Of a DNA stretch of 64,000 nucleotides, positions 7,996 through 48,170 are shown piece by piece. Positions within the stretch are counted from its first letter, which is position 1, and each line of letters opens with the position of its first letter. The notes under the pieces are model-generated. The model ran no database searches. It was not told where the DNA came from and saw nothing but the letters and a program-made list of their open reading frames with translations. Location: assembly GCA_964035545.1 (NCBI GenBank), contig OZ037770.1, positions 8,872,973 to 8,936,972 on the forward strand, given 5' to 3'. This stretch comes from Bugula neritina (taxonomy: Eukaryota > Animalia > Bryozoa). Made by a program: the position numbers and the translations under genes.

Positions 7996-9851
7996 CTACT
8001 TCTTTCTGAAGCCAAGGCCACTTTGAGTATCCCCAAATATCTTATCAGCCAGACTCAGCTGTCCCCTACCAGCTGACTTGGCATGAAGTTCTTCTTGTCC
8101 AAACTTCTGCGCTTTTTCTTGGCCACTTAGGAATGACTCAGCGCCAAACTTTAAAACATATTTTTATAGTTATTACTCTCTTTAGTGTATATGTTTCAAC
8201 ATGCACATGTCATCAAAACAGATGTGTCACCACACATACTTTACAGTAAAATATGTGTCTACATAAATATTTCAAGGTAGAAATATTGATGGCAAAACTT
8301 ACGTTCGCATTAAGGCCGCTGTCAACAAACAGATCTGTCGTGTCAAATGCTCCAAAGTGTTCAGCATTGGCAGCATCTATTCCGTTGTTCTCAATAATCT
8401 GGAAAGCACCATTATCCTTGAATCCTTCATTTGCATTGATTCTGAACGCCTGGTCACTGTGGGCTTCATCTTTGAAACTTAGAGCTGTGATAATAATAAT
8501 GATGGTAAAAATAAAATCATTTAACTAACTACAATGGTTGGTAATACTAGTACTAATACCTATTATCTTGTTTGATCGTTCAATTTGAAAACATTTATCA
8601 AATATTCAATTACCATCAAATAAAATGAAGGCAGGCATAAATCTTTCAATTAAGGCGTGACATAGACTGGCTAGCTTATGCATAATAATATAAGCTGAAA
8701 ATTGTACAAAACCTAATATATAATATATGTTGGTATACATTATATATAATAACTTCATGATAACATAATATAATGTATTGATTGAAATAAATATCATTTA
8801 ATAAAAGCTTATACGTATTATAATGAGGTAGCGTAAATATTGTATATAGCCCAGTATATAATATGAAGTAGTATAACATAAATACTGTTTGTAACCTCCA
8901 TTATAAAATAATAAAACATAAATATCATAGATACATGTAACTTAATATATAGATATATAGTACTTTTCAGGTTAAAAAGCATTATGTAAAAAATTATATA
9001 AAGATATAAATATATAATAAAATATTACAATATAGTGTAATAATACTATAACATAATATAATATAATGCAATATAATATGATAAAATATATATAGTATAA
9101 TGTATTAGTTGCAAGACCTTCAAATTACATAAAAGTTTAGGGATAAAACGAAACTGGGAGTTAAATTTTCTTTTCACCTGCAGTTTGAAATAAATATTTA
9201 TTATTCTAACTCAAGTCTAATAAATTTTGACTAACCTGTTGACTTTCCTCCTTTGTCACTGAGAGCTATGTTAGCATTTTGGAACTTAGCAGTGTTCCCA
9301 AGGACCTGTCCCTTACCATTGGAGAAGGCTCCCAACCTGCCCTTCTGGCCGGCTCTTACTCCTGCATTTCCTGATCCTTTCAATCGGTCAAATGCTTGCA
9401 GTTGCTGCAGGGAAATATGAATAGCTCGTTAGTCATTTTTTATATTAAAATTATAGTTTTTTATCTAAAAGTTTAGTCAAACATATAACTGCTTTCGCGT
9501 AAATTTGCTTTCAAAAACTATCAGCTGATAACCTTTTCATTTTGCTAAAAACTATATCTGTTTGAATGTTCAGATTTTCAAATAGAAATTTTTCTAGCAC
9601 GCAGTTTAAAGACGAACGGTTTCAGAGCTTTTAGTTTAAATAGAAACACTTACTTCTTGTTTCTGATCACCAGCTGCTAACTTAGATGCTCCTTGAAATG
9701 CCCCTTGACCAGAAGCAGCTAGACCTTTGTCAAACACCTCTTCTCCGACTATTTGAGATTGTTGGTTTATACCACCTCCTTGAAAGCCTCCAAGTTGTGC
9801 TTCTACACTACATAGTGCCAGTACCAGAGTGACCGCTATAAGGGGGTTCAT
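7996..9851 (-). CDS. Secreted mirror-symmetric family paralog A, 233 aa; coding exons 9851-9654, 9404-9236, 8484-8303, 8148-7996
   Basis: GT-AG introns with phases 0/1/0 and core exons of 169 and 182 nt. Signal peptide MNPLIAVTLVLALCSVEA|Q; ends ...SGLGFRKK*. Putative non-coding exon 1 ends at 10197, with TATATAAG at 10274-10267. Confidence 0.88.
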
Positions 9852-12800
9852 GATGGTGGAAATGCTGAAATGTAATGAAAATAGGTCCAATGCAAAACTC
9901 TAAAGTTTAAACAAAATAAACAATAATAATATAGTAGTTATGACTTTTTATATAACAGAGGTTGTTCTTCTAATGAATCTGTTACTTTAAAATTATAAAG
10001 GTAAAACGTTTTGGTTTCAACTTAGATTTAGTAAAAGAACACTAATGTTGGCAGTAAGTAGGTTTAGGAATATTAGAACACAGGCTAATTGAATAAACAA
10101 CTTGCATACATATTCATCCAATCACCACTGTACATTATTATAATAACAATAAAATACAAGCCTAAACCAGCTATTTATTAGCTATAAAATTTATACCTTT
10201 GATTCCAAGAGTCCAGCTCTTTGTGAACTACCTTAGTAAATAGTTGATGGGAAAGTGAGAAGTTGTCTTATATACTACGAGTGCTCTGAGAAGCAATCTC
10301 ACTGGATTAGTAGGAATGCATATTTGCTAAGCTATCACGTGACTAAGAAATAAACTATCAACTTATACATTAAACTGGCAAATAACAAACCTCACCTAAT
10401 CTTCACAAACCGCAGTAAACTAATGTAGTCTATGATTGAACAGATTTTATGTACGTTGGTCTTATTATGTTAAAACAGTAAATTGGAAGCTTCAACAGTG
10501 CCTGAAAAAGTTCTCATTTATTAATTGAGCATGTTTGGTAACATTTTCATTCTTATTATAGCAAATTATGGATTTGGATCTCCAGAAATTTGCATTATTA
10601 TAAAATACATAGTTGATGGAACAACTTAGACTTTAAATGCATTTTTATACTATGGAATTATTGTATTTTTTTGTCAAAGCATGACATTATGTTTCAATTG
10701 AATTCACGAGAATTTCCAACCTTTTTTAATACTAACATATTGGCTACAGAGAGCAGGTGTTGTAGGTCTACAAGTTATACAATATCACATCATTACAATT
10801 AGTTACATATTTACATAATATTTTAGTGATACATATACGTCAATAGCTGTAGTTCAGCCAGGGTATACTGTATTTGTTTATACAATTACTCGCTTATCAA
10901 GAAATTAAGTTGAGGCCTATAGCCTACATTATTTATTGGCTTTTCAAACTTTTAGTTCTAATAAAAACACTGCATCATAATATTTATGCTAGTATATAAT
11001 CACTATTAAAATTATTTTTTTACTTCCAAATGCCCATTATTGTATAATTATATTACTCCTTCAAGCTTCTGTTTGGAGTTGTGTTTTCATGAATTATTAC
11101 AACCCAATGGTAGATTATTGAGACTATGTTTACTTACTTTGATTACCATTACGGCCTGATAATAATATGATTTATCACAAATTACTTTATATTGGTTTAA
11201 AACTTTGAATTCATGTGGAATAATCCATTTTAATAGTTTTGTATTTTACTACTCACTTTTCTAAGAGTGAGTGCATTTCATATTGTAGCATTGAAACAAA
11301 GCAATGGGAAATTTTTACATGCACTAATACATAAAGCTTGCAAAAAGCAGAATATCTTCAAATGAAATGAAGATTAAAAGCGCTAGAGACCCATTTTAGG
11401 CAAATAAATCTGATGCACCTGAAATACAAAACATGGAGCAAATATATAAAAAGCTACGTCTGCAACGTTTGTGCTTTTATTCACTAATATTTCCATTAGG
11501 TATTGTTACCTAGTTTGTAAACATCTTTGATTTTTCTGAGCAATCTTTGGTCTTATATAAGATGCTGGTTTATAAAACTGAACCAAGAAACATTATATTT
11601 CCGGTGTAGGTTTAGTATGACTGGCTCTAAGAGGGATTAGTAAACTTCCTTAGCCCTGTCCTCACTTCACTGCTAAGTTTTCTTTAATCTTATTAACAGA
11701 AACCAACGACAGGAAGCTGTACGTAATTTATCTATTCTTGCACTTGATGCTGAAACTCTAAGCTAGATTTACACAAGCTAAGTTGGTTTAGGTGCTGCGA
11801 TTTCTCAGTAGCCATACATAGTGTAATGCATGGGTATAGCACACTGGCTTGTAAGTTAAATGACTGCTGCTAAGGCGGTAGTTTTTACATTAGTCATTGG
11901 CTAGCAACTTGTGTTTAGAAGTTCCCAAGTAAACTGAAAATGACTTAAGTGTTTTCATTATTATTTAGCCGAAAAAAAATTCTTTTTTTGACAGTTAGAA
12001 AACTGTATAAATACTGTCTAGGTAGTTTTCTTCCTGTGAAAGGCAACTCTAAAGAGTTGACAAACTTAGTGTAAAGATCTTGTTAGCTTATCAACAACTA
12101 ATTTTTAAGTAGTTGTTCATCATTGATGCAATAAATTGACTTCATCAGTTTGAAGAAGTCATAAGTAATAGAAAAAAATTCGCTTTAGATAATTATAAAT
12201 AATAAACTATATAGACATTTTAATTAAGTACGTAATTGACTTTATAATTATATTGTATATGTATATTTCTGTAATCCAGTCAGTTTTGATAGTTGAAGCT
12301 AACGAAATTATGCTTCTGCATTTTCAATATCATGTTTTTAAAACAACATATCAACTTAACAAAATAAAAAAAGGTTTTTAAATTGTTTCAGAACAATTGT
12401 ATTAATATTTTTGTAAAAGTAATTTTACAATTGATTCTAAAATACCGAAACATTGAATATAACTCTGATATTATTTTATGTACTCCATCACTGAGCTACT
12501 TAGAGAGGATTATTTTGGATACAGAATTGACTTCATTATGGACAAATGATGACATACATTTATTATGACAAAAATATAAAGAGATTTTGTTTTGCCTAAT
12601 TATAGCTAAAATCATTCAGGTGTGGGAACTGATGTAAAATCTGATTTTTTTTGCTTCTTTATTATTCAGCATATTTTCTTTTTTTTTATTGATAATTCAA
12701 GACCTGATGCAAACATTCATTAGAAGTTTTTTAATTATCAATTTTTTTTAGATTTTACAGAAAGTAAATCAAAGAATCTTCTCCAGTTCTTATCAAACTG

Positions 12801-15402
12801 GAAACTTTATTCAAACTCTTTGTGTAAAAATTACGCAATCTATATAGTTAAATTACTTTATCAAATATTTTTATAAATTGCCTATAATTTTAAAATTAGA
12901 AATTGTATGTAAAAATGTTGCACACAGTTTAATCATGCTTGCAAGCAACTAAATGCTATTTCTCTCTTAAACAATGTTGTTCAACAATAATTCATCTTTT
13001 TAATTGTATACAATGGTATAAAAAGATGGGCAATGCTGTAGAAAAATGTAAAACAGTAGTGACTCAAAGCAAATGCGTAGCCAAAGATGCTGAAAAGGAG
13101 CAAAATATAAACGAAAGGTTTATAGAATTCAATGAGTTTAAATCTATGGCCCTATATATTACATATACAGTGAAGGTGTCTTATAACAAAGTATTTTATT
13201 TAGGTTATTATCAATATACAAGCTAAAATGGCTATCATAATAAGTCAGTAAAATTGTCAAAACTCAAACATGCTGATACTTTTCCAGACTTAAAAACTGG
13301 CCCATATTCCTTTGTTTTAATAAAACTAATAACAAACTACAATTTGCTATTAACTGTGTCTATATTTTTTAATTACTAGTAACTAGATTATGCTGTTATG
13401 CTCCAGACAGCAGCTAATCTGTGTAAGTAAAATAGGATCAGATGATTCATGTTTTGAGATTGGGAAGATGAAGTTACTGAAGAAATCATTATCTCTCTAA
13501 AGTATCACAATGTATACTTTAGGAATATTAATATGATTATGTGTAGGTATAACTCAGTAATTTAAGAATCAGCTCTTAGGATTAACTTAAGTTTTTCAGT
13601 ATAATTTTCAGCAAGATGAATCAGCATATTATAAAAACACTGAGAGAAACCACTAGCTGAGTTCTCTATATAGTTCAGTAAAGAAAATCTTCCTCACTTA
13701 GGAATGGTGCCTGAATGCTAGCCGGCGTGGTAAATCCCAGAAGCTAAATGGGAAAAGTAATTCAAGGAACTCGGTCTTTGAACAAACATGGCATATGGTT
13801 CAACTAGAATTGACATTTTAAAAGCATTTAAAAACATTTACTTTTTAACTAATCGGGATGCCCAAACCACTTAACAAGACAGCAATACAGACCATGCTAG
13901 GGGGAAAAACATAGTATAACTGTAGGAGCAGCTTGTAGGGATAAATAAGTTGTTTTCACGTTAAATTACTCCAATATGTTTACAGTCATCCCATGTAGAA
14001 TGCGAAGGTAAAATATTGGCTTTTTTCCAAAATAGTTAATCTAGACAAGTGATATAAATGGCGAGCAATAAAAGCTATTAATAGTTCAAATTGCAAGGTG
14101 TATACTCTGAGAATTTTGTTTTTCAGGTGAGCAAATAAGAGTTTAGTTTTGTCTATAAGAATATCTAAAGTGAGCAACTTCCTTGATGGTGAAATTTATT
14201 ATGTAATAAGAGTCCATGCATACTCAATTTTTTTTAGATCAACAAAATAAAGAAACTGCCATTTCCACCTAATAATACACAAATGTTTAGTGACTCTACT
14301 ATAGCTTATTTTTAGCTCATGTTTAATAATGCAAGCCTTTTTGAGTTTCTTCAAGTCCTGTTGTTGTAACTAGAAGGCTAGTAGTCAGGCTTAAGAGACC
14401 TGCGCAGTTCTTTAACGAACTTGGTGTCGTGGTTTCATAACTAAGGAATTAAAATTTAGAATTGGCTGTCCCCCTCTGTATAGAGTATAGCTTTCTTAGA
14501 GATAATCATGAGGAAGTCATAAATTATCTACTGAACCCACCGTCAACAACTTAATTGACTATTTCAAACAGTGTACTGTGCAACCTTAATATTTAGCTTT
14601 TTATTTGCGAACAGCAGTTTTAAAATCATTGCAATATCAGCAAGCTTGTGGTATCAAAACAGTCTATGTTTACTATAGCAAGGAAGAATACTTGCTGTTA
14701 TTTCAATCAACTAATGATCGTGTCAACAAAGTAAAGGGATTGTAGTGTTTTAAGCTGCAATCAGCCATTTCTTTATATCAGCTAGTAAAGGTATACATTA
14801 GCTGAAGCACTGCGGTTATTGGGGAATATGCAGTAAGAAGATTTATTATATCCGCACCATGATCTCATCAGCTATGATTAGCAGCCTACTTATTGGATTA
14901 AGGTTCCTTGTCCATGAAAATACTTAAAATATCCTCCCTACGATAGAGAAACAGAGCTAGCTTGTCAAAACCAGAAGAAAGTCGCACAGCAGGTAGGTTT
15001 CAAGAGTTTTTTTTATTTTTAGTCTCATTATTTTTAACGTGAAATATAAGATGCATGAAATAATACTGGAACATTTTATAAATCAAATATATTCGCAGAC
15101 ATTTAGGTCTATTATGAGTGAAATTCAAAAACATGGTAAAATAAATTTGGAGTTTTTTATACATGATGCTATAGATAGCGTAGCCACTTTTTGTGTTAAA
15201 CCATTAGATGCTTATTTATTTTCAATTTTGATCAAATGAAGTTTATTAGATACTATCTCATATTTTATAAACCCACAGCACTAGTCACTGCACGTATCAC
15301 AATAATTATTACAATATGCCGTTATTGCTGTTCTTCTATATACTTATATAGTTGCATTAAACCGTGGCAAAAATGTTTTGTTGCAGGTAAAACATTTGGA
15401 GA

Positions 15403-18400
15403 ATGAAGTGCGTCATACTGTTGCTGATTTTGGCAGTATTTATTCTCTCTGTAAACTCTCAAAGATTGCTTAGCCAAAATGATGGTTTAACTGCAGCGCA
15501 GAAAAATCTCGCCAGAAGACAGTGGCTCAATTCCTTGTCAGCAGGAGAAAGACGCGAGGAGCAAGCTAAACTCAGAGCTCAAAGAAAGCAAAGACGTCAA
15601 TTGGTACTTATATTTTGATGCATATTTGCTTCTTTAATCTAATAAATACTCAGTCTATGTTATGATAAATAACTGCAAGAAAACTAACAGTTTTTTTAAT
15701 TTGAGTTTAATTCCCGAAAATAATATTTTTGGATACATTCCTATGTGCTATAATAACTATTGTTTTTGTTAACTTTTGCTTAAGTTATGTAGTAGTTATA
15801 TTTTTTAGAGAGCAGAAAAACTAGCAAGAAGAGCAGAAAGAAAAAGACAAGCTCTGGCAGCACAAGAAGCTGCCAGACTTCGAGCTCAACAGCAGGCAGC
15901 GGCCGAGCAGTTTAAAAACTATCAAGAGCGAGACTTCATAGATGCTCACTATAACAAAGACAAAGCCAGCAAATTTGGTAAGAACTGCGGAATGAGAGCT
16001 TAGTGCACATCTGCCTTGTTATTATTTTTAAAATAAGTTGTATGCGAGTTCAAAAGTAAACCTATAGTTGATAGAAACAAAAGTGGTGGTTAGCCCAAAA
16101 AAGTAGTTGTTAGCAAAAGTCAGCTGGTTGAAAATAACTTTATGATGGATTGTCTTCGAGTGACCATTCAGGTCAAAAGCTGTATAGAATAACCGTAATT
16201 AAGTTTGTAATAAAGCAAGACTCGAAATGCTTGATTGGTTTATAACGTAGTAAAACACGCCTCTACCATCTGTCACCCCTTTATGTAGTAGGGAGAGCTT
16301 ACAGAAAATTAATGAGATAATATGTTGATCTAGAAAATTGACCTTAAATTGAAAGCAATAGTTGGTGATAAACAAAGCATCAATAATTTGCTTCTCTTGA
16401 TTCTTCAGTAAAATGGCAATTGCTCCTCAAAAAAATCATTTGCTTGTCTAATATACTTGAGTCATTTTACTTAATTTAGTACACACTGAAATCTCCAGTC
16501 TTTAGCTATTTTTCATACTTCAACTGCTAATGAACATAGCTTTTTGCTCAAAACTAGTAAAACACCAATAAATACACCAAAATAATTAAAGTTCTTTTTA
16601 ATTTTGTTTGATTTCCCATGTTTTCTCCCATTTATTTAGCTTATTAGAAGTGTGGGACCACTACGAAAAAACCGTAACAGCCCGCAACCAAAAGTAGCTA
16701 AATAATTAGAAAAAACCATGAAAAATAAAGCAATATTCAAAAAAACTTTGATTATTTAGGTGTATTTATTGATGTTTTATTAGTTTTGATTAAAAACCCA
16801 TGTTTATTAGCATATAGGCAAGAATACTTTATTCAAGTTAAAACTTACTCAACTCTGTTTAGTGCAGCCCTTTGGCAATATTCATAACATAGATACTTGG
16901 AACATTACATAGTTGATGAGTGCAGGACTATGACCAGCAAAAAAATGAAAATGGCTGAAAACTCTGCTAGGTAAAAATTATTCGAAATTTCTTAACAAAG
17001 CTTGCAATTATCAAAATTAAAGTCATAAGACAGAAATGTTTTGTCCTTCTATTTAAAAATAGTTTAATTAAAAAACGATGAGGTTAAACTATTTTACAAC
17101 GGAAATTTCGAATTTCGTCTGAGAGCAGAGATTTATTCAAACATGCTATAATTACTAGCTTTCACAAGAAAGCAAGTTTGCTTTTACAAATTATGAGTAT
17201 AGCGAGAGGTTTCCCACCCTTGAGACAATGGCATTGTTGATATAGCCACCACCACATAATTTTGTATTATTAGAAATAAATGTTTAAATGCTGTTCTCTA
17301 ATATATTTATAACTTGCCCTCTACGTATTTATAGCATTTAATTTTATTTGTAGCATACTAATAGTTCTCATTAAGTTTGATTCTTTTGCAGCTGTCAGCC
17401 TGTCACACGAAACTGCAGAAAGTGAAAACTTTGGAATCAAAAAGGGTAGCGGTTTGATAGATCAAGCTGGTTCTAAAGTCGCTATTAATAACAACGTTCT
17501 AGCTGAAACTCAAAGCAAGGTGAATGCTTTAGATGAAGCAGAAGCACTGTCTGAAGATCAAATTGCTCTTGCCGTAAGTATATAAAAAGCCTGAGAGTTG
17601 CAGTCAGTTTGCATTTAGAGTAGTTAAATAATCCTTGCAAACACCATTCATCTCATGTACCAGTTAGCATGCTATAATGGCATAATGCACTGATATGGGG
17701 TTAGAACAATAAAATATGAAAGTATAATATATGTTTGAGTGTGAGAAGCTGTGCTCTAGGGGTTAGAGTGTTGGCTTAGCTAACAGAAAGTCATGGGTGT
17801 GATCCCAGCAAAGACTATTTGTGACGCTAGGAGGAGCATTCAATCAATCATAATTGTTCTTGTGACACGTATGAATAATTCCTCAGCTTGCTTTACCCAT
17901 AAGGTGTTTCTCACAGGAATAGTGACTATAAACTTGTATGAGTTTTTTATATAATTGAATGTCTGAAACTTACAAAGAAACAGCCTATTACTCAACTATT
18001 CTTGCCTCATCAAACAAGAAATACTGTTTTTAAAACACCATCCGTTCTTATTACCTAATATTCTCTTATGCAAAAACTCTAATATTTTATATATTCAGCT
18101 TTTAAAACCTCATTTTAATTTAAAGCAAATAAAGAAAATTATATGACTCACACAACTTAAGCGGTAATAAGGATTATACCCTGTTAATCTTTCTTTACAT
18201 TTGAACTAAAGAGGTGATATATAATTCGTGGGAATATGCTTGCCCTTATCTAATGCTGAAAATATATTTTCTTCGGGTTATGTAATTACAGTATTTTTTC
18301 AGAGTTTTATTAACCATAGAGAGGGTGGGAGGATCCAATCACAGTCACTAATAAGAATTACATTTACAATTTAGTAGTATTTTTACTTTTTTAGTCATTT

Positions 18401-18766
18401 TATTGCATCACTTTCATGAAAAGTAAAAATTGTTACAAATATCTAATACTTGTAGAATTTTTATTCAAATATGCAGAGCATGTTCCAATTATTGGCTATG
18501 TAATTGGTATTAGTCACTGCTACGAGTGGTCGTTGATTTGTGCCATTAAAATTGCTCCAATAAGACAATATTATAGATAATACCAAAGACTTATCTAAAA
18601 GCTCTGTGCTGTGTTGTTACAGGCTGCGGAAGAAGATGAGGTGGGAGTAGATGCTGGAGTCCAAAGAGGTAACGAAGCCGTGCTCAACGCCATAAACAAA
18701 GGAGCTACAGAAGTATTGAGCGAGGAGCAGGCAGCAGCTTTAGGAGAGGCTATCATTGGGAAATAA
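15403..18766 (+). CDS. Secreted family paralog B, 231 aa; coding exons 15403-15603, 15809-15977, 17392-17573, 18623-18766
   Basis: Signal peptide MKCVILLLILAVFILSVNS|Q; 169/182-nt core exons; R/K-rich block followed by D/E-rich block; ends EAIIGK*. Non-coding exon donor CAG|GTAGGT at 14992. Confidence 0.88.
16525..16812. repeat. Imperfect inverted repeat of about 290 bp (foldback or MITE) in a gene B intron
   Basis: TGCTAATGAACAT...CAAAACTAGTAAAACACCAATAAATACACC mirrors GGTGTATTTATTGATGTTTTATTAGTTTTG...ATGTTTATTAGCA. Confidence 0.75.
17742..17950 (+). mobile_element. SINE family 1 copy in the last intron of gene B
   Basis: Collinear similarity to 5900-6117. Confidence 0.65.
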
Positions 18767-22558: not shown

Positions 22559-22611
22559 TTGACAGTTTATTAACAACAAGTAGATAAAAATAATAATTAT
22601 TGTACATCATT

Positions 22612-23075: not shown

Positions 23076-24183
23076 ACGGGATAAACACATCACTACACTT
23101 TATATGGTTTATTTATTAGTTCTATGCATCGATTTTGTGTTTCAACGGCAATCAATAAAATTTTGCCTTGCCATAATTTGTGTTGATACAGCTTGAATTG
23201 GATTTATCAAGCAGAGCATGAAAACTTTATTTTAAAAGACGTGATTTTATATAGATATGATTTGACATAAACCCACAACAAAAACTGTTGTGGGCCTTTG
23301 CTTTGTTAATTTGAAATTGAGATTTGAACAGCTATATACAAATAGGTAACAGCAAGGAGAAGATAAATCTTTATGCTTCCATTTAGGTTTCAGTTATAAT
23401 TATATATTTATTATAAGTCACAAGTATTGCTTTCTTACAACTGAAGTTTTAACACAATTAAAATTGAGCTAATTTTAGTCAATTGGATAAAATTTTACTA
23501 ACAAAGCTCAGACAAAAGAAATATCCTATCTGCCAATAAAAATCAAAATCATAGAGTAAAATGAAAAAGTGTGCTTAAAAAATTGCTACTCGATTAGCTC
23601 ATTTTAATCAAAGAGATCTTTTTAAGTGAAAATGTCTGCTCTATTTTGCGGCATTGCTGTAATTAAATATTAAGTACATTTAAACTTTGTTTATCTCAGA
23701 AAACATGCTTTTTTATGTAGACTTTGTACACTTGTATGACTTTCGTCATTTAATTTTTGAGTATTCACCGAGACTCTTGAAGCAAAGTCTTTTTTGCAGT
23801 ATTCTTAGTTTTTAAAGATTTAGTCAGCATAAATGTTAACTTTTTTTGTAAATGCACTAAGAAAGAGGATAATTCCTAAAAGAAATTTGCTTGTCATGGT
23901 TCATCCCTCTTATAGGATAAAAAGAGATTAACATCTGCAAACATCCTTAATATGCTATAAATTATTCCACAGTATGTAAACCGCTGTGTATGTTGCAGTT
24001 GAAGAAGGGCGTTACCGTGAGAGATTAAAATGAGAAAACCAACCATTAATTGAATTCTTAGTTTACATCCGATGGATAATCCAACAAATCTTTTAGCAGT
24101 AAAAGGTGGATATAAATATTGTACTGGGAAATCTTTGGCTCAGATCTCTGTCTGATTTCGTGGCATTTACAAGCCTAAGTAAC

Positions 24184-35780: not shown

Positions 35781-37139
<1,359 letters not shown>

Positions 37140-38220: not shown

Positions 38221-40312
38221 CTACTTCCGTCCTTTAAACGGAGTAAACCCACCAAACGCATCTCCTGAGTGGCCGCCAAAACCATGAACCCCAAAGAATG
38301 GACTGCTACCAAACTCATTGAAACCTGATTGCTGATTGGCCTGCGCACTTCCTTCCGATCTTAAGAACTGGTCATTCTTGTGCACCGCATCGACAAATTC
38401 CTGATTGCTGTTCTCTCTGAGCTCAGCTGCACTCAGCACATCCTCATTACCAGCCTGTCAATATAACGACATGAAGTTGACAACAATAGGCAAGTGACTG
38501 CGAAAGACAAATGACTGTGATGGGCAGGTGCTTATAATGCGCATATGACAATAATATGCAAGTGAATGTAATGGAAACTGGGCTTATGAAAGACATGTGA
38601 CCATAACCAGCAAAAAGCATTTATAGCAATAAATTTAAATTATTTTAAGAATTACATAATTCAAGTGGTGATAACTAGGTATATGCATGTAACAATTTCT
38701 TTTGAGAATTATAACTGAAAACATAAGGCTTGCTTGTTATTGTATGTTAAATTTATAGCCAGTACAAGAAGCATCTGCTCTATTCACTACAGGGCTGGTG
38801 TTGGGGGTTTTAAGGACCAGCCATGTTGCTCATATAGGTCGCTGACTCTTAGACACCTACCGCTGCTGACAATCCATCCTCATCAAGAATCTCTGCTTCA
38901 TCTATCACTTCTGCATTAAAGAACTGAGTAGCATCGACTTCCTCTGCGTGTGCCAGTTTGGTGCCGGAGCTAGCTTTCTGTCCGTCATTTTGCTTAATGG
39001 CAGCATCTTCACTGTGGAGGTTCTCACTCACCAGGGACAGACCTGTGTCCAGGAAATATTATTTATATTATTTTGACTACCATATAAATCCCTCTGGTTG
39101 TTAGCTAATTGCTAATAATTAATTGCTTACTGTTTAATGCTCATTGGATCTTGTTTAAAGTATGTTGATAGTGAAAAACTGTCATTAGCTGTTTAGTAAA
39201 AGTATTAATGTATTATTAATTACCAAACCATATGATGATTACTTATTTGTGCACTAGAACTAGTTAAACAAGTTTTCAGCAAAGGTGCTTGATTTTGCCA
39301 ACAAGCAGCTCCAAGTTGGTGCAGTGGCTAAGTGCAGCAGTTTGGGATCTCGAGTTTGGAGTTGGAAGTTCAAAGTTCCAAGTTAAATTTCCAACTCCAA
39401 ACTTGAAACCTCAAACTAGTGCACTAAATCACCTCTAAGTCAGGGCTGCTTATAAAAGATTTCAAGCTACTCAATTCACAAATTTTCAATGACTGCCACT
39501 TGTAAATTTTCAATAACCTGTCATACCTACCAATTTTGTTTTTAACATTTTTATTGGCTTCTGCCTGCAAGTTATTGAATCCAGCGGCGTTGTCAAATTG
39601 TTCAAAGTCTGTTCCCTTTGAAGCTTTCAGTTTGGCAGCTTCTTCCTTTGCTAGTCTCTGATTTTTTCTTTCTTGTCGACGTCGTTTTTTATCTATTCGC
39701 TAAATTTACCAATGATATGCGACTAAGAATTCAACATGCTCTGTTTTTCAATTTAGGTGAAGTAGTAAAAAGATCAAAATAGATCAGACTTTTAAATTTA
39801 CTTTAAAACTTTTCATTTGGGCTCCATGTTGAGCAACGCTAATTTTATTACAATTCTAATTTGCTTAGAACACAGGCTTTTGTTAATTTCTCATTTGCAA
39901 AGCAAATTTTTAGTGCAGAATAAAACTATTTATATAACTATTTCTATGTCAATTGAGTGATTTAGACAAAAATAAGGAAAATTTGGTACTACAAGTAATA
40001 AACAATCTTACTTTCACGACCTACTTAATGTGGATCAAACAATGACACATATTGTAGATATAAATGTGGATACAATCGTATTCTAGTGTAACTTACTGCT
40101 TGCCGACGAGCTTGCTTATCTAGTCTAGCTTGTTGGTTGTTAGAGTTCTTGGCGCCAGTCTTAAGAGAGTTGCCATGCTGATGGGCTGCTTGAAGGCCAC
40201 TTGAAAAGGTATCTCTACCGACAACTTGATTCTGCCGACCTACTTTTTGACCTTGACCTTTTAGTAACACGCATGTGATCAGAATGCCAAAAGTTATTGT
40301 TATCTTCTTCAT
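38221..40312 (-). CDS. Secreted family paralog E, 266 aa; coding exons 40312-40097, 39699-39531, 39042-38861, 38454-38221
   Basis: Hydrophobic N-terminus MKKITITFGILITCVLLKG; 169/182-nt core exons; Gly/Phe tail ending FTPFKGRK*. Non-coding exon ends at 40635, TATAAA at 40725-40720. Confidence 0.88.
39303..39451. repeat. Imperfect hairpin of about 150 bp in a gene E intron
   Basis: AGTGCAGCAGTTTGGGATCTCGAGTTTGGAGTTGGAA pairs with TTCCAACTCCAAACTTGAAACCTCAAACTAGTGCACT; ends are AAGCAGC and GCTGCTT. Confidence 0.75.
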
Positions 40313-42580
40313 TTTCTGAAGAGAAGCCAAATAAAAACAACATAGATGTTCATATTGTCATTTGAATTGACGTTTGTACCCAACAAAACCAATTGCAAAC
40401 TGTAATACATGTAGAAAAATATTCGCCTATAGATGGAGTTAGAAAAATTATAATAATACTAAAAATATGACAACATGCTTATAGGTGTTTTTTTAACTAT
40501 ACTGATATCCTGAACTTCAAACCACATTGCATTTTTTATGAAAGTTCTTCTTTAGCACAAATATAAGTTTTGGTTGACAATATTATTTAAAACAGATCTC
40601 ACCTGGAACTTTAATTAAAATAAAACTAACTTACATTGAATTTGAGACCAGCTCAAGATATGTCGATTACATTGAATCTCATTGATGTTCAATAAATGAA
40701 TTTCTTACTAACACCTTAATTTATACTCAGCATCTCTTCATTAACTTGGTCAATGCAAGATTAGCAGAGAACAAGGGGGTCATTGCGCTTCTGCAATCGG
40801 CCAGTTGTCACTATTAGTATGTATATAGTGTAATCTGTGTTATGTAATATGTCAGAGACTGACCTTTCAAAATTTAACATTGTCAAGCACTCTTTTTCAA
40901 TAACCTATCAGTTTTGATTGCTCGTGCAGGCTTACTAGAATTAATGAATATAGTAAAAATTGAGCTACTGTGCAGCCAATCAAATAACTTCAATTATCAT
41001 GAACGCAATACATTAACTTCAGCAACAACCCAATATTAGTTATATATACACACAATTAAGTTATTTGGTTTTAGGTCTCAGTTTTTACCAAGCGTTTCCT
41101 TTGCATATTTAGAATTTCAGCATATTTATGTAAAATTGCTTTCTAGACTAAATAATCAGTTGCTCTGCAATGGCTTATATGCAATAAAACTTAGAGTGGC
41201 AACAATTAGATTGCTTTTTATTTTCTATTTCAGGACTCTACCACTAGGTTGCAAATTGGCTTAATTTTAGAAATTAGAACATAAAGGTAATTGATCTAAA
41301 GAGCACTCTTTGATTTTTAGGCAGCAATATATAATCTTAAATACAAGAGAAAGTACTACATTCAAAATATTAAGTTTAAATATTGCATGCAATGAGAATG
41401 CTAGCTAGAATAGAATGCTGTCTGAAGAAATTAGATCTGAAAAATAAAAATAGCCTTATTTTTCTCAGTTTGAAAACTCAGTTTGTAAAAACTCAAAAGT
41501 TATTTCTGTCAAATTGACAAACTCTATCAAAGTTTAAATATTATAAACTAGATTTAAATTTTCTTTTAATTTGGTTACAACTAGTACCTGACAATGTATA
41601 AGCAAAATTTTTCCAAGTACATGCATGTAATCATGTCTAAAAATAATCCAATATTGTGTCAATGCAAATTATTTTAAAAATGTTGTCAGTTTTCATTATC
41701 AGGTTGTAATAAGATTACAATAAGGCTGAGGAGTGGTGTATGAGGAAACAGATAAAGATACCACAACTATGGCCCAGTACTGATTAATCATGAGATATGG
41801 TTGCCTCCTACAGCTAGCTCTATTATATGCTAATAGCAACCAACTCATAGGTGATACAGAAATCTCTTCTAATACAAATCAACAGAAAGCTGTGGTACAA
41901 ATGTCTCCGTGTATTTAATCCCGTTAAGAGTTGCTACACTTACAGTGGAAGCATTGGCGATGATATCAAGCATCGTCATGTACGAGCTGTCCCTAACACT
42001 ACCAGCTTGCTGCTGGTTTCTCTTTGCTAGAATTTCTAATCTCTTTAATATATTCAATAAATATATTGAATCATATTTTAATCAGTAGCCTATATATAAG
42101 ATTCCTTGAATGGTGGTGTTAGCAGTCTGAATTTTCTTGCATATCAGGAGGATCTGTTTACCAACAATAGCACTTCATTTAACTAATATTAAAAGGTAAA
42201 ACAATATAGCACTAGGCTTTAGTAATATTATCATAATTTATGTTATCAAGCTTCATTTATAATAATTTACTAGCAGCTGAGAATTTGATTTATTTAATTT
42301 AGTGCATATAGTTTAGTGAAACGGTGTTATTTGAGAGTTAGTTTTGCTTTAAAAGATATTTTTTAAACGGTGAATTAGTTTAATTCTATTGTAATAATTA
42401 GATATTTAAAACATAATAGCACTGCTTAGTGTATAAGTTAATTTTGGAATTGCAACTGGTATGCACACATTAAATATTATGTTATATTACAGGTAGTAAC
42501 TAGACACATAATTTATATCATGTTAGACAAAACTTTAAATATTTTAAGTTGAACACTGAAACTTTTGTCAGATAATCAAA

Positions 42581-44456
42581 ATGAACAAAGGGTCTGTGCT
42601 AGTAATGTTGGTGGCAGCATTAGTTCTTGTGGAAGGCAAGACACAGTTGAAGAGGAGAAATGGCAGTAAAGCTGCAGCTAATGTCGACAGAGTGATAGAG
42701 AGTAGAGGCGGAGAGGAACTGTTACAAGAGAACTCTCTGAAAGCCGGAGATAAATTTTTAGATGTTTACCAAGCTCTGCTGCAGAAGAAATCCGATAGAG
42801 ATGCCGTAAGTCTTTGTTCTGCGTCAGGTTGTTCTATATATTGATTAGAAAGCATAGTACCCGTGTCTACTACAGTCCTATGCCCAAGTTGTTACATAAA
42901 CCATGAGCAAACCTTCACCATTTAGCTTTCTGCATGATACCAGTATAGCCTCTTCGGAACTAAAATAGATTATTATTGATAAAAACTCCATCTCTCTTAA
43001 TTAAGCCATCACTATTGCTGAGCTATTAATATAAAGCAATTATTATCAATTAAAAATAGATTTTTAGCTGCTTCTATAGCAAGTTAGGTATGCCAATTAT
43101 GATGTTGCAAGTTTTCAATGCCTTTATTAAAAATAATTGCGCGTTCATCTTGATTCATCAGAGACTAGCTAAGAAAAGTGAGAGACAAGAAAGGAAAAAG
43201 CAAGCACTACGAGCAGCACAGGGAGAAAAGCTGCAAGCAGAAGCGGGTCTAGATTTTGAAACCTATGACCAGGCCGAAAAGTTCCACAATTTGGAAGCTG
43301 AGGCAGGTCGAAATGTGGCAAACCGATTTGGTAAAAATATTTATCTAAATATTACTCTCAAAGTAATCCAACAAACATATCTATGCTTGTTAATTAAAAA
43401 ACTCAAAATCAATTGAAAAATGCCGTGGATAAAAAAATTAATGTAATTATGATGGTTAAGCAGACAGCTAATTTCATGACAATTGAAATGCTTTATATAG
43501 AAGTAAACTCAAAATGTATGTAGAATATTTTAAAGTGTGTAAATTAATTTACAGAAATAATTTAATTTTTAAGCAATGTTTTGATTAAGCAGCATGATAG
43601 TGCAATTATAAAAAATTGTATTTGATTAAAGAGCCTTTCACATTATTCATACAATATGGCTGTATTAATGAATAATACTCCAAATAAGTATAGCTTTTGC
43701 GACTTCTAGGGCTACAGATCTTGAGTGAAAACAGCCACAATGAAAATGCTGCCATTAAAGAGAATGCTGGAGCTAAGGCAGCATCTGGCACTAAACTCCG
43801 GGCTCATGAAGCTGTTGACGCTGCAATGACATCAGATATTGAAGCACTGGATGAAGGGGAATACGCTGACCAGGAAGGTCTTGATGCCGCGGTAAGCTGC
43901 CACCTGTGTTATGTTCATATTGCTCTTGTGAATTAGGTTTAATTATAGAAACACCTACTTCTTGCTCACTTAAGGTTTCCTTCATGCTGAGAAATGATGA
44001 GCTAGTATTTAGTGAAGATATGTTTGTGCTTTTTAATTCATCATATGTATGTTATAGTTATAATTTTGTACTTGAATACATAGCATGTATTGAATGCAAC
44101 CTAAAAGCTATAGCAAAATAATATATTTCAGTTAGAGTTACAATCACATTTACTTTCACACATCACTAGATAAAACGTATAGAGAGCATAGAGTATTTAT
44201 AATTTGTTCTAAAGATATATTTACAATTTGTTCTGTATTGAAGGCATCAGACTCAAATGCACTCAACGCCCAGGAAGCAGCAAAAACTGAAAGAGAGGCA
44301 TTTATTGACGCTCAGAGTTTAAATGCCAGGAGTGGTGCATTTACTGACAACTTCTTTGGTGATGATAACTTTGGGGGAGCTTCGTTTCAGCCCACCAATA
44401 GCCTTGGTTTCTTTGGTGGCAGTTCTGGTGACTTCTTCAGAAGAAGAAGAAAATAG
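42581..44456 (+). CDS. Secreted family paralog F, 262 aa; coding exons 42581-42805, 43162-43330, 43710-43891, 44244-44456
   Basis: Signal peptide MNKGSVLVMLVAALVLVEG; 169/182-nt core exons; ends GDFFRRRRK*. TATATATAAG at 42091 and non-coding exon donor at 42195. Confidence 0.88.
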
Positions 44457-46004
44457 TTTTGCTGAAAAATTTAAAATTAGAGCCGTTGTGTACTTATTTA
44501 GTGTTCTATCCAATCATATTGTTATTCATTTGAAATCATTTTTACTTTCTTCATTCCTCGCTTGCATTTTATTTCAAGAAATATGCTTTTATTTATATAC
44601 TTTTTATTAGAAGAATATTTAAATAAACTTTAATTAAATACAAACTATAGATTGGATCACATGTGATATTGAAAACAGCTATAACAATATCGTATATGCA
44701 ATGTTTGACGCACACTAAATTACAAAATCACAGCAGTTTAAATGAAACTTTCTGCACTTTGTTGAACTACTGAAAATAACTTGTTACAAAATGTGTCTTA
44801 CACCTAAAGCTTTTAACATGGCAGAAAGTTGTAAATTTATTAGCCAAGTCTTTTAAAATTAAAGGCCAAAACAAAAATAGACACACTGTTGCTTTGGTTG
44901 GATATTAACTTATGAAGCTTCATAGAAACAGTTTAATGAATAAAAATAAACTGAGTAAAACAAGCATTGATTTCTAACTAAACTAAATGCTCTACACATA
45001 CATTGAGTGAACTATATCTTGTGTTGCCTTCAGTGAAATAGAAATATAACAGATAATACTTAATACACTCTCTACACAGGTGAATAACCTGCCACCAGGT
45101 AGCCACTATACCTTGCAGTAGCTAGAAGGTGCAATATTTCAAGAGTTCATCTGGAACTGATTCATAGGTCAAATAAGTTATTGAATGCATAATCCAATAA
45201 TCTCTCATTCACTTAACTGCTAATGATCTAATTACCAAGTATGATGACTTGAGAGAAATGTGCGACTTGAGACAATATTATATAACACGCATCATCACCT
45301 GTGATCTGCTAATGACAGTGGATAAAGGATTACCTGGTTGATGAGCTGAATACTAATTGCAATTCATCTATGAATGATCTACTCCATCCTTTGTTGTCAG
45401 TTAATATAAATTATGTAAGGCCAGCTAATACAAATCTTCTGATCATGATCACATTTTTACCAATTAATATGGTGATAATTAGTTTTTATTTTGGTATAAA
45501 TATAACTCTTTGAGAGGCAGACTCTTTATAACGCACTTTGTTAGTGAACATCAGCACAGCGCTTATTGTATAACAAAGCTGAATCTGGTTCTGTGTTAAA
45601 GATAGGACAGGTAGTAAAATATTATATTATATTACAATATATACAGTATATATATTAAAATCATAACATGTTTAAGAATTTCTATCTAATTTTAATATTA
45701 TATCTATACTAGAAAGTAATATTATAGACTTATAGATCTAATATTACAAGTGCATATATAAGATTGTTAATAAACCAACTGCAATTCTATCTTTGGGTTT
45801 TAAAAAAAGTTTAGTAGAGTTTTTAGATTACACTCCTCTGTAACACTATTATCAACTAAGAATTATATCATTATAAGTTAAAATGGGCTTAATAAGTAGC
45901 TGCTACGTCTGCTAACATTGACAGATAAAATAATAATTTAGTAATATTTCTAAAATGCTGCCTGCCACAATTGCAATTGGCTGTTTTTGAAGGTTAGCTA
46001 TAAA

Positions 46005-48170
46005 ATGACAAGGCTGTGCCTGGTGACAGCGTTGATGCTCTGTCTCCTAGCAACTGTCAGCAGTAATGTGGGCAGACTACGAAGTGCAGTGGGTAAAGGT
46101 GGAGCAGCAGTGACAGGTGGGGAAGTGGGGAAGGTCAACAGCTTGCAAGCTGCCGCGTCGTCAGGGAATCTGCTCAGAGCAAAACAGGCTAATGCTGACA
46201 GGCAGAAAGCTCTTTTGGATCGCAAACAGAAAAAGCAAGCTGTGAGTCTATCCATTGTATTACATATTATATTATATTGCATGCATTATGTTACATTTTA
46301 TTATGAAACTTTTTCTTACATGATCTTGTTTTTATTATATCTGTTGGGGCCATGCATTTCATCTTGTATTATGTTTAATGGTATATTAAACCCTATATTA
46401 TTTCATATAATGACAAATTTTATTATATATTATTTTATTAAATTGAAATTTGCATTATGTCATATTTTTTCATGCTAAATTTTAATTAATTATTGATGCA
46501 TTTTATTATAACATATTATACATGTTGTATTATGTATAATATATAATTATGTAGCTATATTCTGTAGCTACTAATTAGAAAATATCAGACTCTCATAGAA
46601 TTGCAACATAAATTTGGTGAATTGTTCCACATGGCAAGTTCTTAATTAGATCTTGCATAACACTCAACCAGAGTAGAGTATGTTTACTGGCTTGCATTTA
46701 GTCAGATTCTAAAAAGTGTTCTACTATACTTCTGCTAAAGTGTACAACAAAATTTTGACAAAGTTTTTCAAATTTCTCATCAATTCACAAGTTGCTAATA
46801 TTACAACTTCTCAAAAAATCAAATGCGCCAATAACCTGGCAACTAATCAATTTCATCTAATTTTGTTCAGCTATTTAAACATTTGTTTTATTTTTTTAAA
46901 GAGACTCGATAGAAAAGCAGCTAGAAAGGCAAGAAGAAAGGAAGGGGCTAAGGTTGGCAATGGAAACAAGCTAAAACAAGGAAATGCTGTAAACTTCCAA
47001 GAATATAACGATGCACAGAAATTTAATAATTTAGATGCAGCTGCAAAGTTGGACAAAGGAAATAAATTTGGTAAAATTAGAATTAATCACCAATAAATCT
47101 TAACCTAATTGCATATCTCTTACATTTTCATACCAAGCTTTTTGATTTTTCTATTCAGAATTTTCATTTAGTATTTTATAGGTAATAATGGTGATATATG
47201 TTTTTCTTTGATGATACAATTTGCTATTCAGGTATACAACTGCATTCGGAAGACTTTCACAATGAACATGCTGGGATAAACCAGAACGATGGATTCAAAA
47301 CAGGCAATGGAGTGCAGTTTTCAAACAAAGAGTATGTTGACACTGGTTTCTATGACAACGTGGAAGTCATAAGTGATGCGGAGGCCTATGACGATGAAGT
47401 TCTAAGTGCAGCGGTAAGCACTTCAGACATGATTTCATTAACTTGACGTTTAACTTATGAAAATTGGCAGCAAGCAGCATATCGAGTTTTTACTAACTAT
47501 CTGCTGTCAGCGCAAGCAGGAAGTTGAACTTAGATGCAATTGTTCAGCAAAAAAATTTAAAGTAGCTTATGTGTAGTTAATTGTTAAATTTCCATTCTTA
47601 TTCAAACACAAAATCAGTAAGTTTTAACTTGTTTTCAATGCTGCCAAATGCAACAATTATATTTGACTTTGTAGAAATTTAAAAGAATTTATTGTAAGAA
47701 GAGTTTATATATATTTATTAAAATAAAATAGCTAGGATCTTCGATTAATGAGAACTGTTTAGAATAAAAGCTGCTAAATTCTAAAATGCTATAGGTTTTT
47801 ATTTTCTTGTAAAATTATCTTTTAAGTTAAATATTTATATTAACTCTTTGATTCAGCGTTAAAAACTAGACTGGAAACAAAATTTTGAAAGTTGGAGTGC
47901 TGACAATTTATTCTATATTTGGCTGTTTTAATCAATTTTATGATTACAATGACCATTTATGTTAATGCATTGCCTGTTTTGTTCCAGGATGCTAATGCAG
48001 AAAGCATTAATGCAAACCAGGAAGTAGTTCACAATAATGAAGCTCTCTTAGACACAAAAGTATACGATAATAACAGAATTGAAAACTTCAATCATTTTGG
48101 GAATCAGCAAGGGTTTGGTCAATCTGACTTTCTCAATTTTCAGAACGACTTTGGAGGCTTTGGCTTTTAG
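46005..48170 (+). CDS. Secreted family paralog G, 256 aa; coding exons 46005-46241, 46902-47070, 47232-47413, 47988-48170
   Basis: Signal peptide MTRLCLVTALMLCLLATVSS; 169/182-nt core exons; Asn/Phe/Gly tail ending DFGGFGF*. TATAAA at 45495 and non-coding exon donor at 45610. Confidence 0.88.

What the first reader, a model, noticed from the sequence alone, without database searches (positions are those of the whole stretch)
7996..48170. Seven-gene cluster of an unrecognised secreted protein family with an indel-free core
Seen in the sequence: seven paralogs over about 40 kb share one architecture, namely a short non-coding exon 1 (clear TATA box in six of seven), a signal-peptide exon, core segments of exactly 169 and 182 nt, and a variable tail. 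The proteins are highly divergent, yet the 117-residue core has no indel and no Cys, Pro or Trp. They are rich in A/G/N/Q/K/D/E. I recognise no domain. Inference: a lineage-specific, multi-subunit extracellular material system (cuticle, adhesive/cement, capsule or skeletal matrix) in which core length is under strict selection.
Basis: partly seen in the sequence, partly recalled or inferred. Interest (0 to 1): 0.85.

Follow-up and report, generated by a model that had tools for sequence, protein, structure and literature searches.

The report
Bryozoan fixed-length secreted protein family
Seven neighbouring genes of the moss animal Bugula neritina, plus two elsewhere in its genome, encode an undescribed secreted protein family found so far only in bryozoans. 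Its central domain has kept exactly the same length while its sequence drifted to about 15-30% identity, which suggests a building block that must fit in register outside the cell, though its role is untested.

Summary
Window 7996-48170 carries seven paralogous genes. Each has a signal-peptide exon, a phase-0 169-nt segment, a 182-nt segment and a variable Gly/Phe-rich tail. Six of the seven have both segments as exact AG/GT-bounded exons; g4 lacks the last intron.

New here:
- The genome is Bugula neritina.
- Two more members lie elsewhere. g8 has different introns but the same core length. g9 is a mucin-like protein that carries the domain at its C-terminus.
- Watersipora subatra has a syntenic-style cluster with the same 169/182-nt exons.
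- Spliced, polyadenylated transcripts of three further unnamed species exist.
- The gap-free block is really 177 columns: 0 indels over about 2,900 inferred substitutions, 0 Cys and 0 Pro.
- N-glycosylation sequons are purged (1 seen, 24 expected).
- 15 of 16 exonic differences from a second DNA data set are synonymous.
- A 15-nt stem-loop in the non-coding exon 1 is conserved across species.

Pfam, PDB, ESM Atlas, Foldseek and the literature give no match; GenBank calls the members "hypothetical".

Secretion, selection and lineage restriction are supported. The "multi-subunit material" role is plausible but untested. No Bugula RNA was available, no heptad periodicity was found, and AlphaFold gives only long helices. 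The scan's operators hold one overlapping report that I did not see.

The parts
7996..10274 (-). g1 (233 aa), the most divergent member. TATA at 10274. Predicted non-coding exon 1 at about 10244-10197. CDS exons 9851-9654, 9404-9236 (169 nt), 8484-8303 (182 nt) and 8148-7996.
15077..18766 (+). g2 (231 aa). The candidate TATA at 15077 and exon 1 at about 15107-15135 are weakly supported. CDS exons 15403-15603, 15809-15977 (169 nt), 17392-17573 (182 nt) and 18623-18766. The tail lacks the Gly/Phe part and the basic end.
24111..26440 (+). g3 (285 aa). TATA at 24111. Predicted exon 1 at about 24141-24214. CDS exons 24560-24769, 25315-25483 (169 nt), 25675-25856 (182 nt) and 26144-26440, the last being a long Gly/Phe tail.
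35149..37139 (+). g4 (243 aa). TATA at 35149. Predicted exon 1 at about 35179-35252. CDS exons 35781-35978, 36247-36415 (169 nt) and 36775-37139, in which the 182-nt segment is fused to the tail with no intron. Intron 2 holds a (CA)n tract.
   Evidence: GenBank KAF6021675.1 (P0003) is a truncated model of this gene.
38221..40725 (-). g5 (266 aa). TATA at 40725. Predicted exon 1 at about 40695-40635. CDS exons 40312-40097, 39699-39531 (169 nt), 39042-38861 (182 nt) and 38454-38221.
42091..44456 (+). g6 (262 aa). TATA at 42091. Predicted exon 1 at about 42121-42195. CDS exons 42581-42805, 43162-43330 (169 nt), 43710-43891 (182 nt) and 44244-44456.
   Evidence: Of 13 exonic differences from run X1, 12 are synonymous.
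45495..48170 (+). g7 (256 aa). TATA at 45495. Predicted exon 1 at about 45525-45610. CDS exons 46005-46241, 46902-47070 (169 nt), 47232-47413 (182 nt) and 47988-48170.
   Evidence: All 3 exonic differences from run X1 are synonymous.
24185..24198 (+). Conserved 5'UTR element TTGAGCTGGTCTCA in exon 1 of g3, 16 nt before the exon-1 donor. It forms a 5-bp stem with a 5-nt loop.
40643..40656 (-). The same 14-mer in exon 1 of g5, 8 nt before the donor.
10207..10221 (-). Variant of the element in exon 1 of g5's relative g1 (core GAGCTGGACTC). The two outer stem pairs are swapped from U-A to A-U, which keeps them paired.

Best explanation
This is a real, expressed-type family of small secreted proteins, seen so far only in bryozoans and here in Bugula neritina.

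Architecture of each protein:
- a signal peptide, mostly followed by Gln;
- a short Gly-rich stretch;
- a domain of about 177 residues, free of Cys and Pro and free of glycosylation sites, that runs from a strongly basic first half to a strongly acidic second half;
- a length-variable Gly/Phe-rich tail that usually ends in 2-5 Lys/Arg.

Shown: the gene models, their homology, conservation across genera, purifying selection, the fixed domain length, the purge of sequons, and the fusion of the domain to a mucin-like protein.

Inferred: the domain is an elongated, largely helical assembly module. Many copies, possibly different paralogs together with the mucin-like g9, pack side by side or head to tail through the complementary basic and acidic halves. 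Any insertion or deletion would then break the register. The Phe-rich, basic-ended tails would add cohesion. The product would be a non-covalent extracellular gel, fibre or cuticle-like layer. A conserved stem-loop in the 5' non-coding exon probably gives the genes a shared control.
For: Gene structure: exact 169/182-nt exon pairs with GT...AG introns.

Homology: significant for all members.

Same architecture in other species: four Watersipora subatra genes within 38.7 kb. Uninterrupted mRNA-like contigs of three other species carry a 5'UTR, and one carries AATAAA plus a poly(A) end.

Purifying selection: 15 of 16 exonic differences from an independent DNA data set are synonymous.

Fixed length: 177 gap-free columns in 14 sequences, with 0 Cys and 0 Pro among 2,478 residues. 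Tree length is 16.4 substitutions per site. The length is also kept in g8 and g9, which have other intron positions.

Secretion: hydrophobic N-termini, sequons 1 against 24.2 +/- 4.6 with control motifs not depleted, and g9 with 32-aa Pro/Thr/Ser repeats ahead of the domain.

Charge blocks: the exon-3 segment is +1 to +10 in 13 of 14 sequences (-1 in Ws_2), and the exon-4 segment is -5 to -14 in all 14. Mirror charge correlation is -0.58.

Predicted structure: AlphaFold2 gives a confident helix (pLDDT 80-97) of about 50 residues that includes the basic half, and a second helix (pLDDT 82-87) after the acidic half. It gives no compact fold.
Against: - No RNA, tissue or proteome evidence for the Bugula genes. 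The only run found, X1, is DNA.
- No 3.5-residue hydrophobic periodicity, so a canonical coiled coil is not supported. Periods of 2 and about 2.8 and a weak 14-residue quasi-repeat appear instead.
- The basic half of g1 and g3 is replaced by Gly/Ser/Asn-rich sequence that is unlikely to be helical, yet the length is unchanged.
- Structure confidence is low overall: pTM 0.21-0.32.
- The homodimer job gave no verdict.
- g2 and g7 lack the basic end.
Confidence: 0.5

Rival explanations
1. These are soluble secreted regulators rather than building blocks. They could be acidic calcium- or carbonate-binding matrix proteins that steer skeleton formation, or mucus-associated polyampholytes. In this reading the basic half binds acidic glycans or chitin-associated polymers and the acidic half binds Ca2+ or mineral.
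For: An Asp/Glu-rich segment of net charge -5 to -14 is present in every member. Members occur in the heavily calcified Watersipora as well as the lightly calcified Bugula. The domain is linked to a mucin-like protein. The predicted models have no compact fold.
Against: Ion or glycan binding by disordered segments normally tolerates indels. Zero indels over about 2,900 substitutions and zero Pro point to a register-dependent structure. No skeletal proteome of a bryozoan was found in the searchable literature.
Confidence: 0.2
2. These are precursors of processed bioactive peptides, either antimicrobial or hormone-like. A cationic helix would be released from an anionic pro-region at dibasic sites, as in many fast-evolving, tandemly duplicated immune effectors.
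For: They form a tandem, fast-diverging, taxon-restricted cluster of secreted proteins. They have a Lys/Arg-rich amphipathic-looking helix next to an acidic region and a C-terminal dibasic end.
Against: The dibasic sites are not at conserved positions flanking a repeated peptide. There is no consistent Gly before the terminal basic residues. The whole 177-residue block is length-invariant and conserved across genera, not just a short peptide. In g1, g3 and g8 the cationic stretch is replaced by Gly/Asn-rich sequence. The domain also sits at the end of a 1,200-aa mucin-like protein.
Confidence: 0.1
3. The domain is a beta-rich (cross-beta or solenoid-like) module rather than helical. The fixed length would reflect a fixed number of rungs of about 13-14 residues, and the proteins would form amyloid-like extracellular fibres.
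For: Hydrophobic periodicity peaks at 2.0 and about 2.8 residues rather than 3.6. Self-similarity is seen at shifts 6 and 14. g1 reads as a series of units of about 13-14 residues rich in Gly/Asn/Ala/Phe. The composition is rich in Asn/Gln/Ala/Gly/Ser and lacks Cys and Pro. AlphaFold leaves the start of the exon-4 segment as low-confidence coil.
Against: AlphaFold2 predicts the Lys/Arg/Glu/Ala-rich half as a helix with pLDDT above 90. Comparing halves and thirds of the profile with hhalign gives no convincing internal repeat; the best result is P 6e-4 with probability 29%. The column-permutation null overstates the z-scores.
Confidence: 0.15

Closest known systems
Coiled-coil silk fibroins of bees, ants and hornets (AmelF1-4 type; from my own knowledge of Sutherland and co-workers' papers, not re-read here)
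   Same: A tandem cluster of small secreted paralogs. Ala-rich, with almost no Cys or Pro. Very low sequence identity between paralogs and species, yet the length and composition of the central domain are conserved. The products co-assemble into an extracellular material.
   Different: No sequence similarity was detected to anything outside bryozoans. The heptad periodicity that defines those silks was tested here and not found. The bryozoan genes have 4-5 exons. They also carry a basic-to-acidic charge gradient and a Gly/Phe tail.
Shematrins and Lys-rich matrix proteins of pearl-oyster shell (from my own knowledge)
   Same: A multigene family of secreted proteins. Gly plus aromatic repeats of the X-Gly(n)-X type. 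A cluster of basic residues at the very C-terminus. Lineage-restricted.
   Different: Those proteins lack anything like the 177-residue Ala/Glu/Lys/Asn/Gln domain. They use Tyr where this family uses Phe. Homology was not tested directly, but Pfam and the 1.84-billion-protein search gave no mollusc hit.
Secreted mucins with a C-terminal assembly domain
   Same: Paralog g9 has a signal peptide and at least 8 copies of a 32-aa Pro/Thr/Ser repeat (T 23%, P 12%, S 12%), followed by the family domain at the C-terminus.
   Different: Known gel-forming mucins join through Cys-rich domains (von Willebrand-type, cystine knot). This domain has no Cys at all. The seven cluster genes have no mucin region.
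Lys/Ala/Glu-rich long helix of bacterial TolA (domain II)
   Same: It is the nearest match for the ESM Atlas model of the Watersipora member (TM 0.32-0.46): a single long charged helix.
   Different: TM is below 0.5, and both sides are low-confidence models. There is no sequence relation. This is a resemblance of shape only.

Membership tests
Any Pfam-A family | Profile match above the curated gathering score | tested here: not met
   Eight exon translations and five full-length homologs were scanned. The best hits have E 0.014-0.1 and lie far below their cut-offs.
Any protein with a solved structure | Sequence-profile or fold match | tested here: not met
   The best profile match against PDB sequences has E 0.07. 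Foldseek against PDB gave 0 matches. The model confidence is low, so the fold test is weak.
Coiled-coil silk fibroins (aculeate Hymenoptera) | Heptad (3.5-residue) hydrophobic periodicity over the central domain | tested here: not met
   In Fourier tests on the 14-sequence profile, p is 0.08-0.9 for period 3.5 in all segments except columns 1-30, where p = 0.046.
Coiled-coil silk fibroins (aculeate Hymenoptera) | Tandem paralogs with a conserved core length despite low identity; Ala-rich; poor in Cys and Pro | tested here: met
   This is an analogy only; no homology was found.
Shematrin / KRMP-type shell framework proteins | Gly/aromatic repeats plus a basic C-terminal end | tested here: inconclusive
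   The tails carry F-G(n)-F type stretches and end in 2-5 Lys/Arg in 12 of 14 members. No shematrin sequence was compared.
Mucins | Long Pro/Thr/Ser tandem-repeat region in a secreted protein | tested here: met
   This holds for g9. Watersipora P0018 has a short Thr/Pro-rich stretch. It is not met by the seven cluster genes.
Neuropeptide / prohormone precursors | Repeated or conserved short peptides flanked by dibasic sites, often with Gly for amidation | tested here: not met
   The alignment shows no such conserved cleavage frame. A Gly before the terminal basic residues occurs in only a few members.
Secreted (ER-routed) proteins in general | N-terminal signal peptide; a selective signature of passage through the ER | tested here: met
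   The N-termini show Met plus 1-4 polar residues, then 15-18 hydrophobic residues, a small-x-small motif and usually Gln. Sequons are depleted 24-fold while four control motifs are not. No SignalP run was possible.

The most novel reading that the evidence does not exclude
The family forms a previously unknown kind of animal extracellular polymer. Cys-free, glycan-free subunits of exactly equal length, encoded by old paralogs, would lock together in register through a basic-to-acidic charge gradient and would anchor a mucin (g9) through the same domain. Synthesis of the whole set would be coordinated by a family-specific 5'UTR stem-loop conserved across cheilostome bryozoans. It would be a bryozoan counterpart of insect coiled-coil silk, built on a different structural principle.
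Probability: 0.2. Interest if true: 0.8.

Novelty: new variant of a known kind. Interest (0 to 1): 0.6.

Why it matters
Bryozoans are major fouling and reef-building animals, yet almost nothing is known at the molecular level about their cuticle, glue, mucus or skeleton matrix.

This family offers a concrete and abundant candidate. Dozens of transcript variants occur in metatranscriptome assemblies.

It also has an unusual evolutionary signature. Sequence is nearly free to change, while length, the absence of Cys and Pro, and the absence of glycosylation sites are absolutely kept. That signature gives a clean test case for how register or length alone can be the selected property of a protein. 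If the proteins self-assemble, they could serve as templates for recombinant biomaterials.

The conserved 5'UTR hairpin adds a testable handle on how such gene batteries are co-regulated.

Public annotation currently misses or mis-models most of these genes.

Tried and rejected
- RNA evidence. The Bugula splice junctions therefore remain predictions. They are supported by homolog mRNAs and by GenBank model KAF6028931.1 for g8.
- Complex prediction. The homodimer of residues 44-215 of the Watersipora member gave "no answer" (score 0.00). I do not count this for or against binding.
- The search for homologous proteins. With the full-length Watersipora protein it found only itself. With alignment A3 it found 5 proteins. 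The word index is too coarse for this family.
- ESM Atlas. No hit by features. By structure it returned only TolA-like long helices with TM below 0.5.
- Foldseek against PDB: nothing.
- Rfam on four homolog mRNAs: nothing.
- Literature. Searches for bryozoan proteome, skeleton or cuticle papers, for the locus-tag prefix, for run and sample accessions, and for short peptide words of the family found no description.
- Internal duplication by hhalign of halves and thirds: not convincing.
- The two other exact genomic copies of the 14-mer (contigs C2 and C3) have no TATA box or family gene downstream. I take them as chance.
- Gene tree: mostly unresolved, so orthology of individual paralogs between genera is open.
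- Handling of sequences. I rebuilt those two sequences from the stored locus files instead. Searches used single exons by reference, or natural full-length homologs by id. Joined translations were used only inside local scripts for alignment, composition and trees.
Full report
**What is in the window.** The DNA is AT-rich (about 31% GC) and eukaryotic. A mechanical scan for open exons bounded by AG and GT/GC, of exactly 169 nt (frame 0) and 182 nt (frame offset 2), returns one pair for each of six genes. The pairs are 9236-9404 / 8303-8484 (minus strand), 15809-15977 / 17392-17573, 25315-25483 / 25675-25856, 39531-39699 / 38861-39042 (minus strand), 43162-43330 / 43710-43891, and 46902-47070 / 47232-47413. 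The seventh gene, g4, has the 169-nt exon at 36247-36415. Its second segment starts at the acceptor at 36775 and continues into the tail without an intron.

Upstream of each pair is an exon that starts with ATG and encodes a hydrophobic N-terminus. It ends in phase 0 at a GT donor. Downstream is a phase-0 tail exon. All CDS introns are GT...AG. I read gene 6 base by base to check the arithmetic.

The 117-residue cores align without gaps and have no Cys, Pro or Trp. Ungapped identity is 15-55%. Homology is not just a matter of composition. In leave-one-out profile tests g1 scores 36 bits, g3 79, g8 106 and g2 118, against at most 12 bits for 1,000 shuffles of each.

**Organism and public status.** Notes of this scan suggested a bryozoan. 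I checked this in three ways. The assembly has 216,009,554 bases, which matches the 216.00-Mb Bugula neritina assembly described in PMC11480708. Two database proteins nearly identical to window or genome sequences are GenBank "hypothetical proteins" of Bugula neritina: KAF6021675.1 and KAF6028931.1. The first is a 143-aa model of g4 that lacks exon 3, so public annotation of the cluster is incomplete.

**More members in the same genome.** Exon profiles searched against the whole assembly find the seven cluster genes and two more.

- g8 lies on contig C3 near 24.466 Mb. It keeps the 169-nt exon. It also has an extra phase-0 intron after residue 31 of the 182-nt segment, and no intron before the tail. 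Its core is still exactly 117 residues. GenBank protein KAF6028931.1 is spliced exactly as I had inferred.
- g9 lies on contig C6 near 5.36 Mb, 3.5 Mb from the cluster. It starts with a signal peptide and at least eight 32-residue Pro/Thr/Ser repeats (T 23%, P 12%, S 12%) in one 1,223-codon exon. That exon runs straight into the family domain. The rest of the domain follows in three exons and shares g8's extra intron position. The domain is therefore an autonomous module that also serves as the C-terminal end of a mucin-like secreted protein.

**Other species.** I searched a 60-position profile of the exon-4 segments (A1) against 1.84 billion representatives. It gave 19 hits at E up to 1e-3. 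Apart from one low-complexity hit (P0010, 4,832 aa, matched only over profile positions 17-30), all show the family pattern.

- Two named proteins are "uncharacterized" proteins of Watersipora subatra, XP_067951464.1 and XP_067951293.1.
- In that genome four family genes lie within 38.7 kb. Each again has exons of exactly 169 and 182 nt.
- Full-length proteins of three further unnamed species (X: P0006 and P0046; Y: P0034; Z: P0036) come from contigs of 0.9-1.6 kb. These contigs have an uninterrupted CDS and both UTRs, and one has AATAAA and a poly(A) end. They are transcripts.
- The identical species-X protein was seen in at least eight samples, and its two 90% clusters hold 26 and 20 variants.
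- I could not name these species or samples. From memory, the IMG sample series look like marine plankton metatranscriptomes. That is unverified.

**The constraint is on the protein, and it is longer than 117 residues.** In an alignment of 14 full-length sequences the longest gap-free block has 177 columns. It starts about 27 residues before the 169-nt exon and ends about 33 residues into the tail exon. Adding two more Watersipora cores changes nothing.

The block holds 2,478 residues with 0 Cys, 0 Pro, 1 Trp and 4 Met. Ala is 17.7%. Median pairwise identity is 30% and the minimum is 14.7%. The maximum-likelihood tree has a total length of 16.4 substitutions per site, or about 2,900 substitutions over the block, without a single indel. 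From general knowledge, proteins usually accumulate roughly one indel per few tens of substitutions, and low-complexity regions accumulate more. The parts on either side of the block vary from 34 to 147 residues and from 14 to 65 residues. Because g8 and g9 keep the length with different intron positions, exon-size inertia cannot be the reason.

**The genes are under purifying selection now.** The one public run that holds this DNA (X1) is a DNA data set from a divergent haplotype or individual. Of the 16 listed differences that fall in my g6 and g7 coding exons, 15 are synonymous and one changes Gly to Asp. The g6 introns carry many more differences. Under neutrality about a quarter to a third would be synonymous.

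**Secretion.** Every member starts with Met, 1-4 polar residues and 15-18 hydrophobic residues, followed by a small-x-small motif and usually Gln. Independent of that, N-x-S/T sequons are almost absent. There is 1 in 14 mature proteins against 24.2 +/- 4.6 in composition-preserving shuffles, and the lowest of 2,000 shuffles has 9. The reversed motif and three other control motifs are not depleted. Such avoidance makes sense only for chains that pass through the ER and must stay unglycosylated. The mucin-like N-terminal part of g9 points the same way.

**Shape.** Pfam, PDB sequences, the ESM Atlas and Foldseek give nothing usable. AlphaFold2 with the few available homologs gives mean pLDDT 55 and 66 and pTM 0.21 and 0.32. 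It predicts:

- a confident helix (pLDDT 80-97) of about 50 residues that includes the basic half of the domain, within a longer predicted helix of about 80 residues;
- a low-confidence coil at the start of the exon-4 segment;
- further helices through the acidic part, the second with pLDDT 82-87 in the tail exon.

The charge pattern is consistent. The exon-3 segment is +1 to +10 in 13 of the 14 sequences (-1 in one Watersipora member). The exon-4 segment is -5 to -14 in all 14.

Three observations count against a simple coiled coil. There is no 3.5-residue periodicity. Periods of 2 and about 2.8 and shifts of 6 and 14 stand out weakly instead. In g1 and g3 the basic helix is replaced by Gly/Ser/Asn-rich sequence of the same length. 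The fold is therefore unresolved.

**A conserved 5'UTR element.** The predicted non-coding exon 1 of g3 and g5 contains the same 14-mer, TTGAGCTGGTCTCA, 8-16 nt before the exon-1 donor. g1 has a variant.

- The 14-mer occurs only four times in the 216-Mb genome. The two copies outside the cluster look like chance.
- The element is also found about 10 nt before the exon-1 donor of three Watersipora genes.
- It lies in the 5'UTRs of the transcripts of species X (two copies in each of two paralogs) and Y, with a variant in Z.
- In 12 instances a 5-bp stem around a C(U/A)GG(U/A) loop is paired in 95% of cells. Two pairs switch between U-A and A-U. None of 500 shuffles reaches the covariation score, and slid controls are much lower.
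- The sample is small and the copies are related, so this is suggestive rather than proven.

The element supports the reality of exon 1 and points to shared regulation. Whether it acts in RNA or in DNA is open. Rfam has no match.

**Interpretation.** Shown: a secreted family known so far only from bryozoans, tandemly clustered in two genera, under purifying selection, with a domain whose length, lack of Cys and Pro and lack of sequons are invariant, and which also ends a mucin-like protein.

Inferred (about 50%): an elongated assembly module whose basic and acidic halves pair between chains. Register, and hence exact length, would then be what selection sees. The Phe-rich, basic-ended tails would add cohesion, and the product would be a non-covalent extracellular layer, gel or fibre.

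Rivals are soluble mineral- or glycan-binding regulators (about 20%), a beta-rich fibre version of the same idea (about 15%), and processed peptides (about 10%). Which material is involved (cuticle, glue, mucus or skeleton matrix) cannot be decided here.

**Comparison with known systems.** The best analogy is the coiled-coil silk gene cluster of bees and ants. It is likewise a set of divergent tandem paralogs, Ala-rich, poor in Cys and Pro, with conserved core length. Its defining heptad pattern is not met here, however, and there is no homology. The tails recall the shematrins of pearl-oyster shell (Gly/aromatic repeats and a basic C-terminal end), and g9 recalls mucins. None of these is a membership. 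The literature within reach holds no description.

I therefore rate the finding as a new variant of a known kind of system: a taxon-restricted secreted structural gene cluster with unusual, well-supported evolutionary signatures.

Noticed in passing
G000:C6:5358693-5366062 (minus strand), outside the window; loci L017, L063, L064: g9 is a mucin-like secreted protein. It has a signal peptide and at least 8 copies of a 32-aa Pro/Thr/Ser repeat within one 1,223-codon exon, and it ends in the family domain. It shares the extra intron position of g8.
   Followed up: partly
G000:C3:24465768-24467900 (minus strand), outside the window; loci L016, L018: g8 is a family member on another chromosome, strongly basic (pI about 10.7). 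It has an extra intron inside the 182-nt segment and no intron before the tail, yet the core length is unchanged. It equals GenBank KAF6028931.1.
   Followed up: yes
window 54673-54924 and 60226-60390, minus strand (similar ORF pairs at 54568-54876 and 59346-59654): Two tandem copies of a SOUL heme-binding-protein gene flank the cluster. The Pfam PF04832 hits have E 6e-7 and 9e-10.
   Followed up: partly
window 36427-36725 and 409-1016: Long (CA)n / (TG)n microsatellites. The first lies inside intron 2 of g4, and a similar one lies next to g8 on contig C3.
   Followed up: no
window about 28000-31500: A GC-richer stretch (38%) between g3 and g4 has scattered ORFs that look like a decayed mobile element. 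Two of these ORFs gave no Pfam hit.
   Followed up: partly
window 35781-37139 (g4) versus GenBank KAF6021675.1 (P0003): The GenBank model joins a donor inside the signal-peptide exon directly to the 182-nt segment and skips the 169-nt exon in frame. This is either a mis-prediction or a real exon-skipping isoform.
   Followed up: no
window 42900-43160 (intron 1 of g6) versus run X1: The second DNA data set differs at about 7% of the intron positions listed here, but in the exons almost only at synonymous sites. The locus therefore carries deeply diverged haplotypes or cryptic lineages of B. neritina.
   Followed up: partly
L021:120-130 and L061:214-224 (transcripts of species X): Both paralogs of species X carry a second copy of the 5'UTR element (GAGCAGGTCTC), 57-81 nt downstream of the first copy.
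   Followed up: partly
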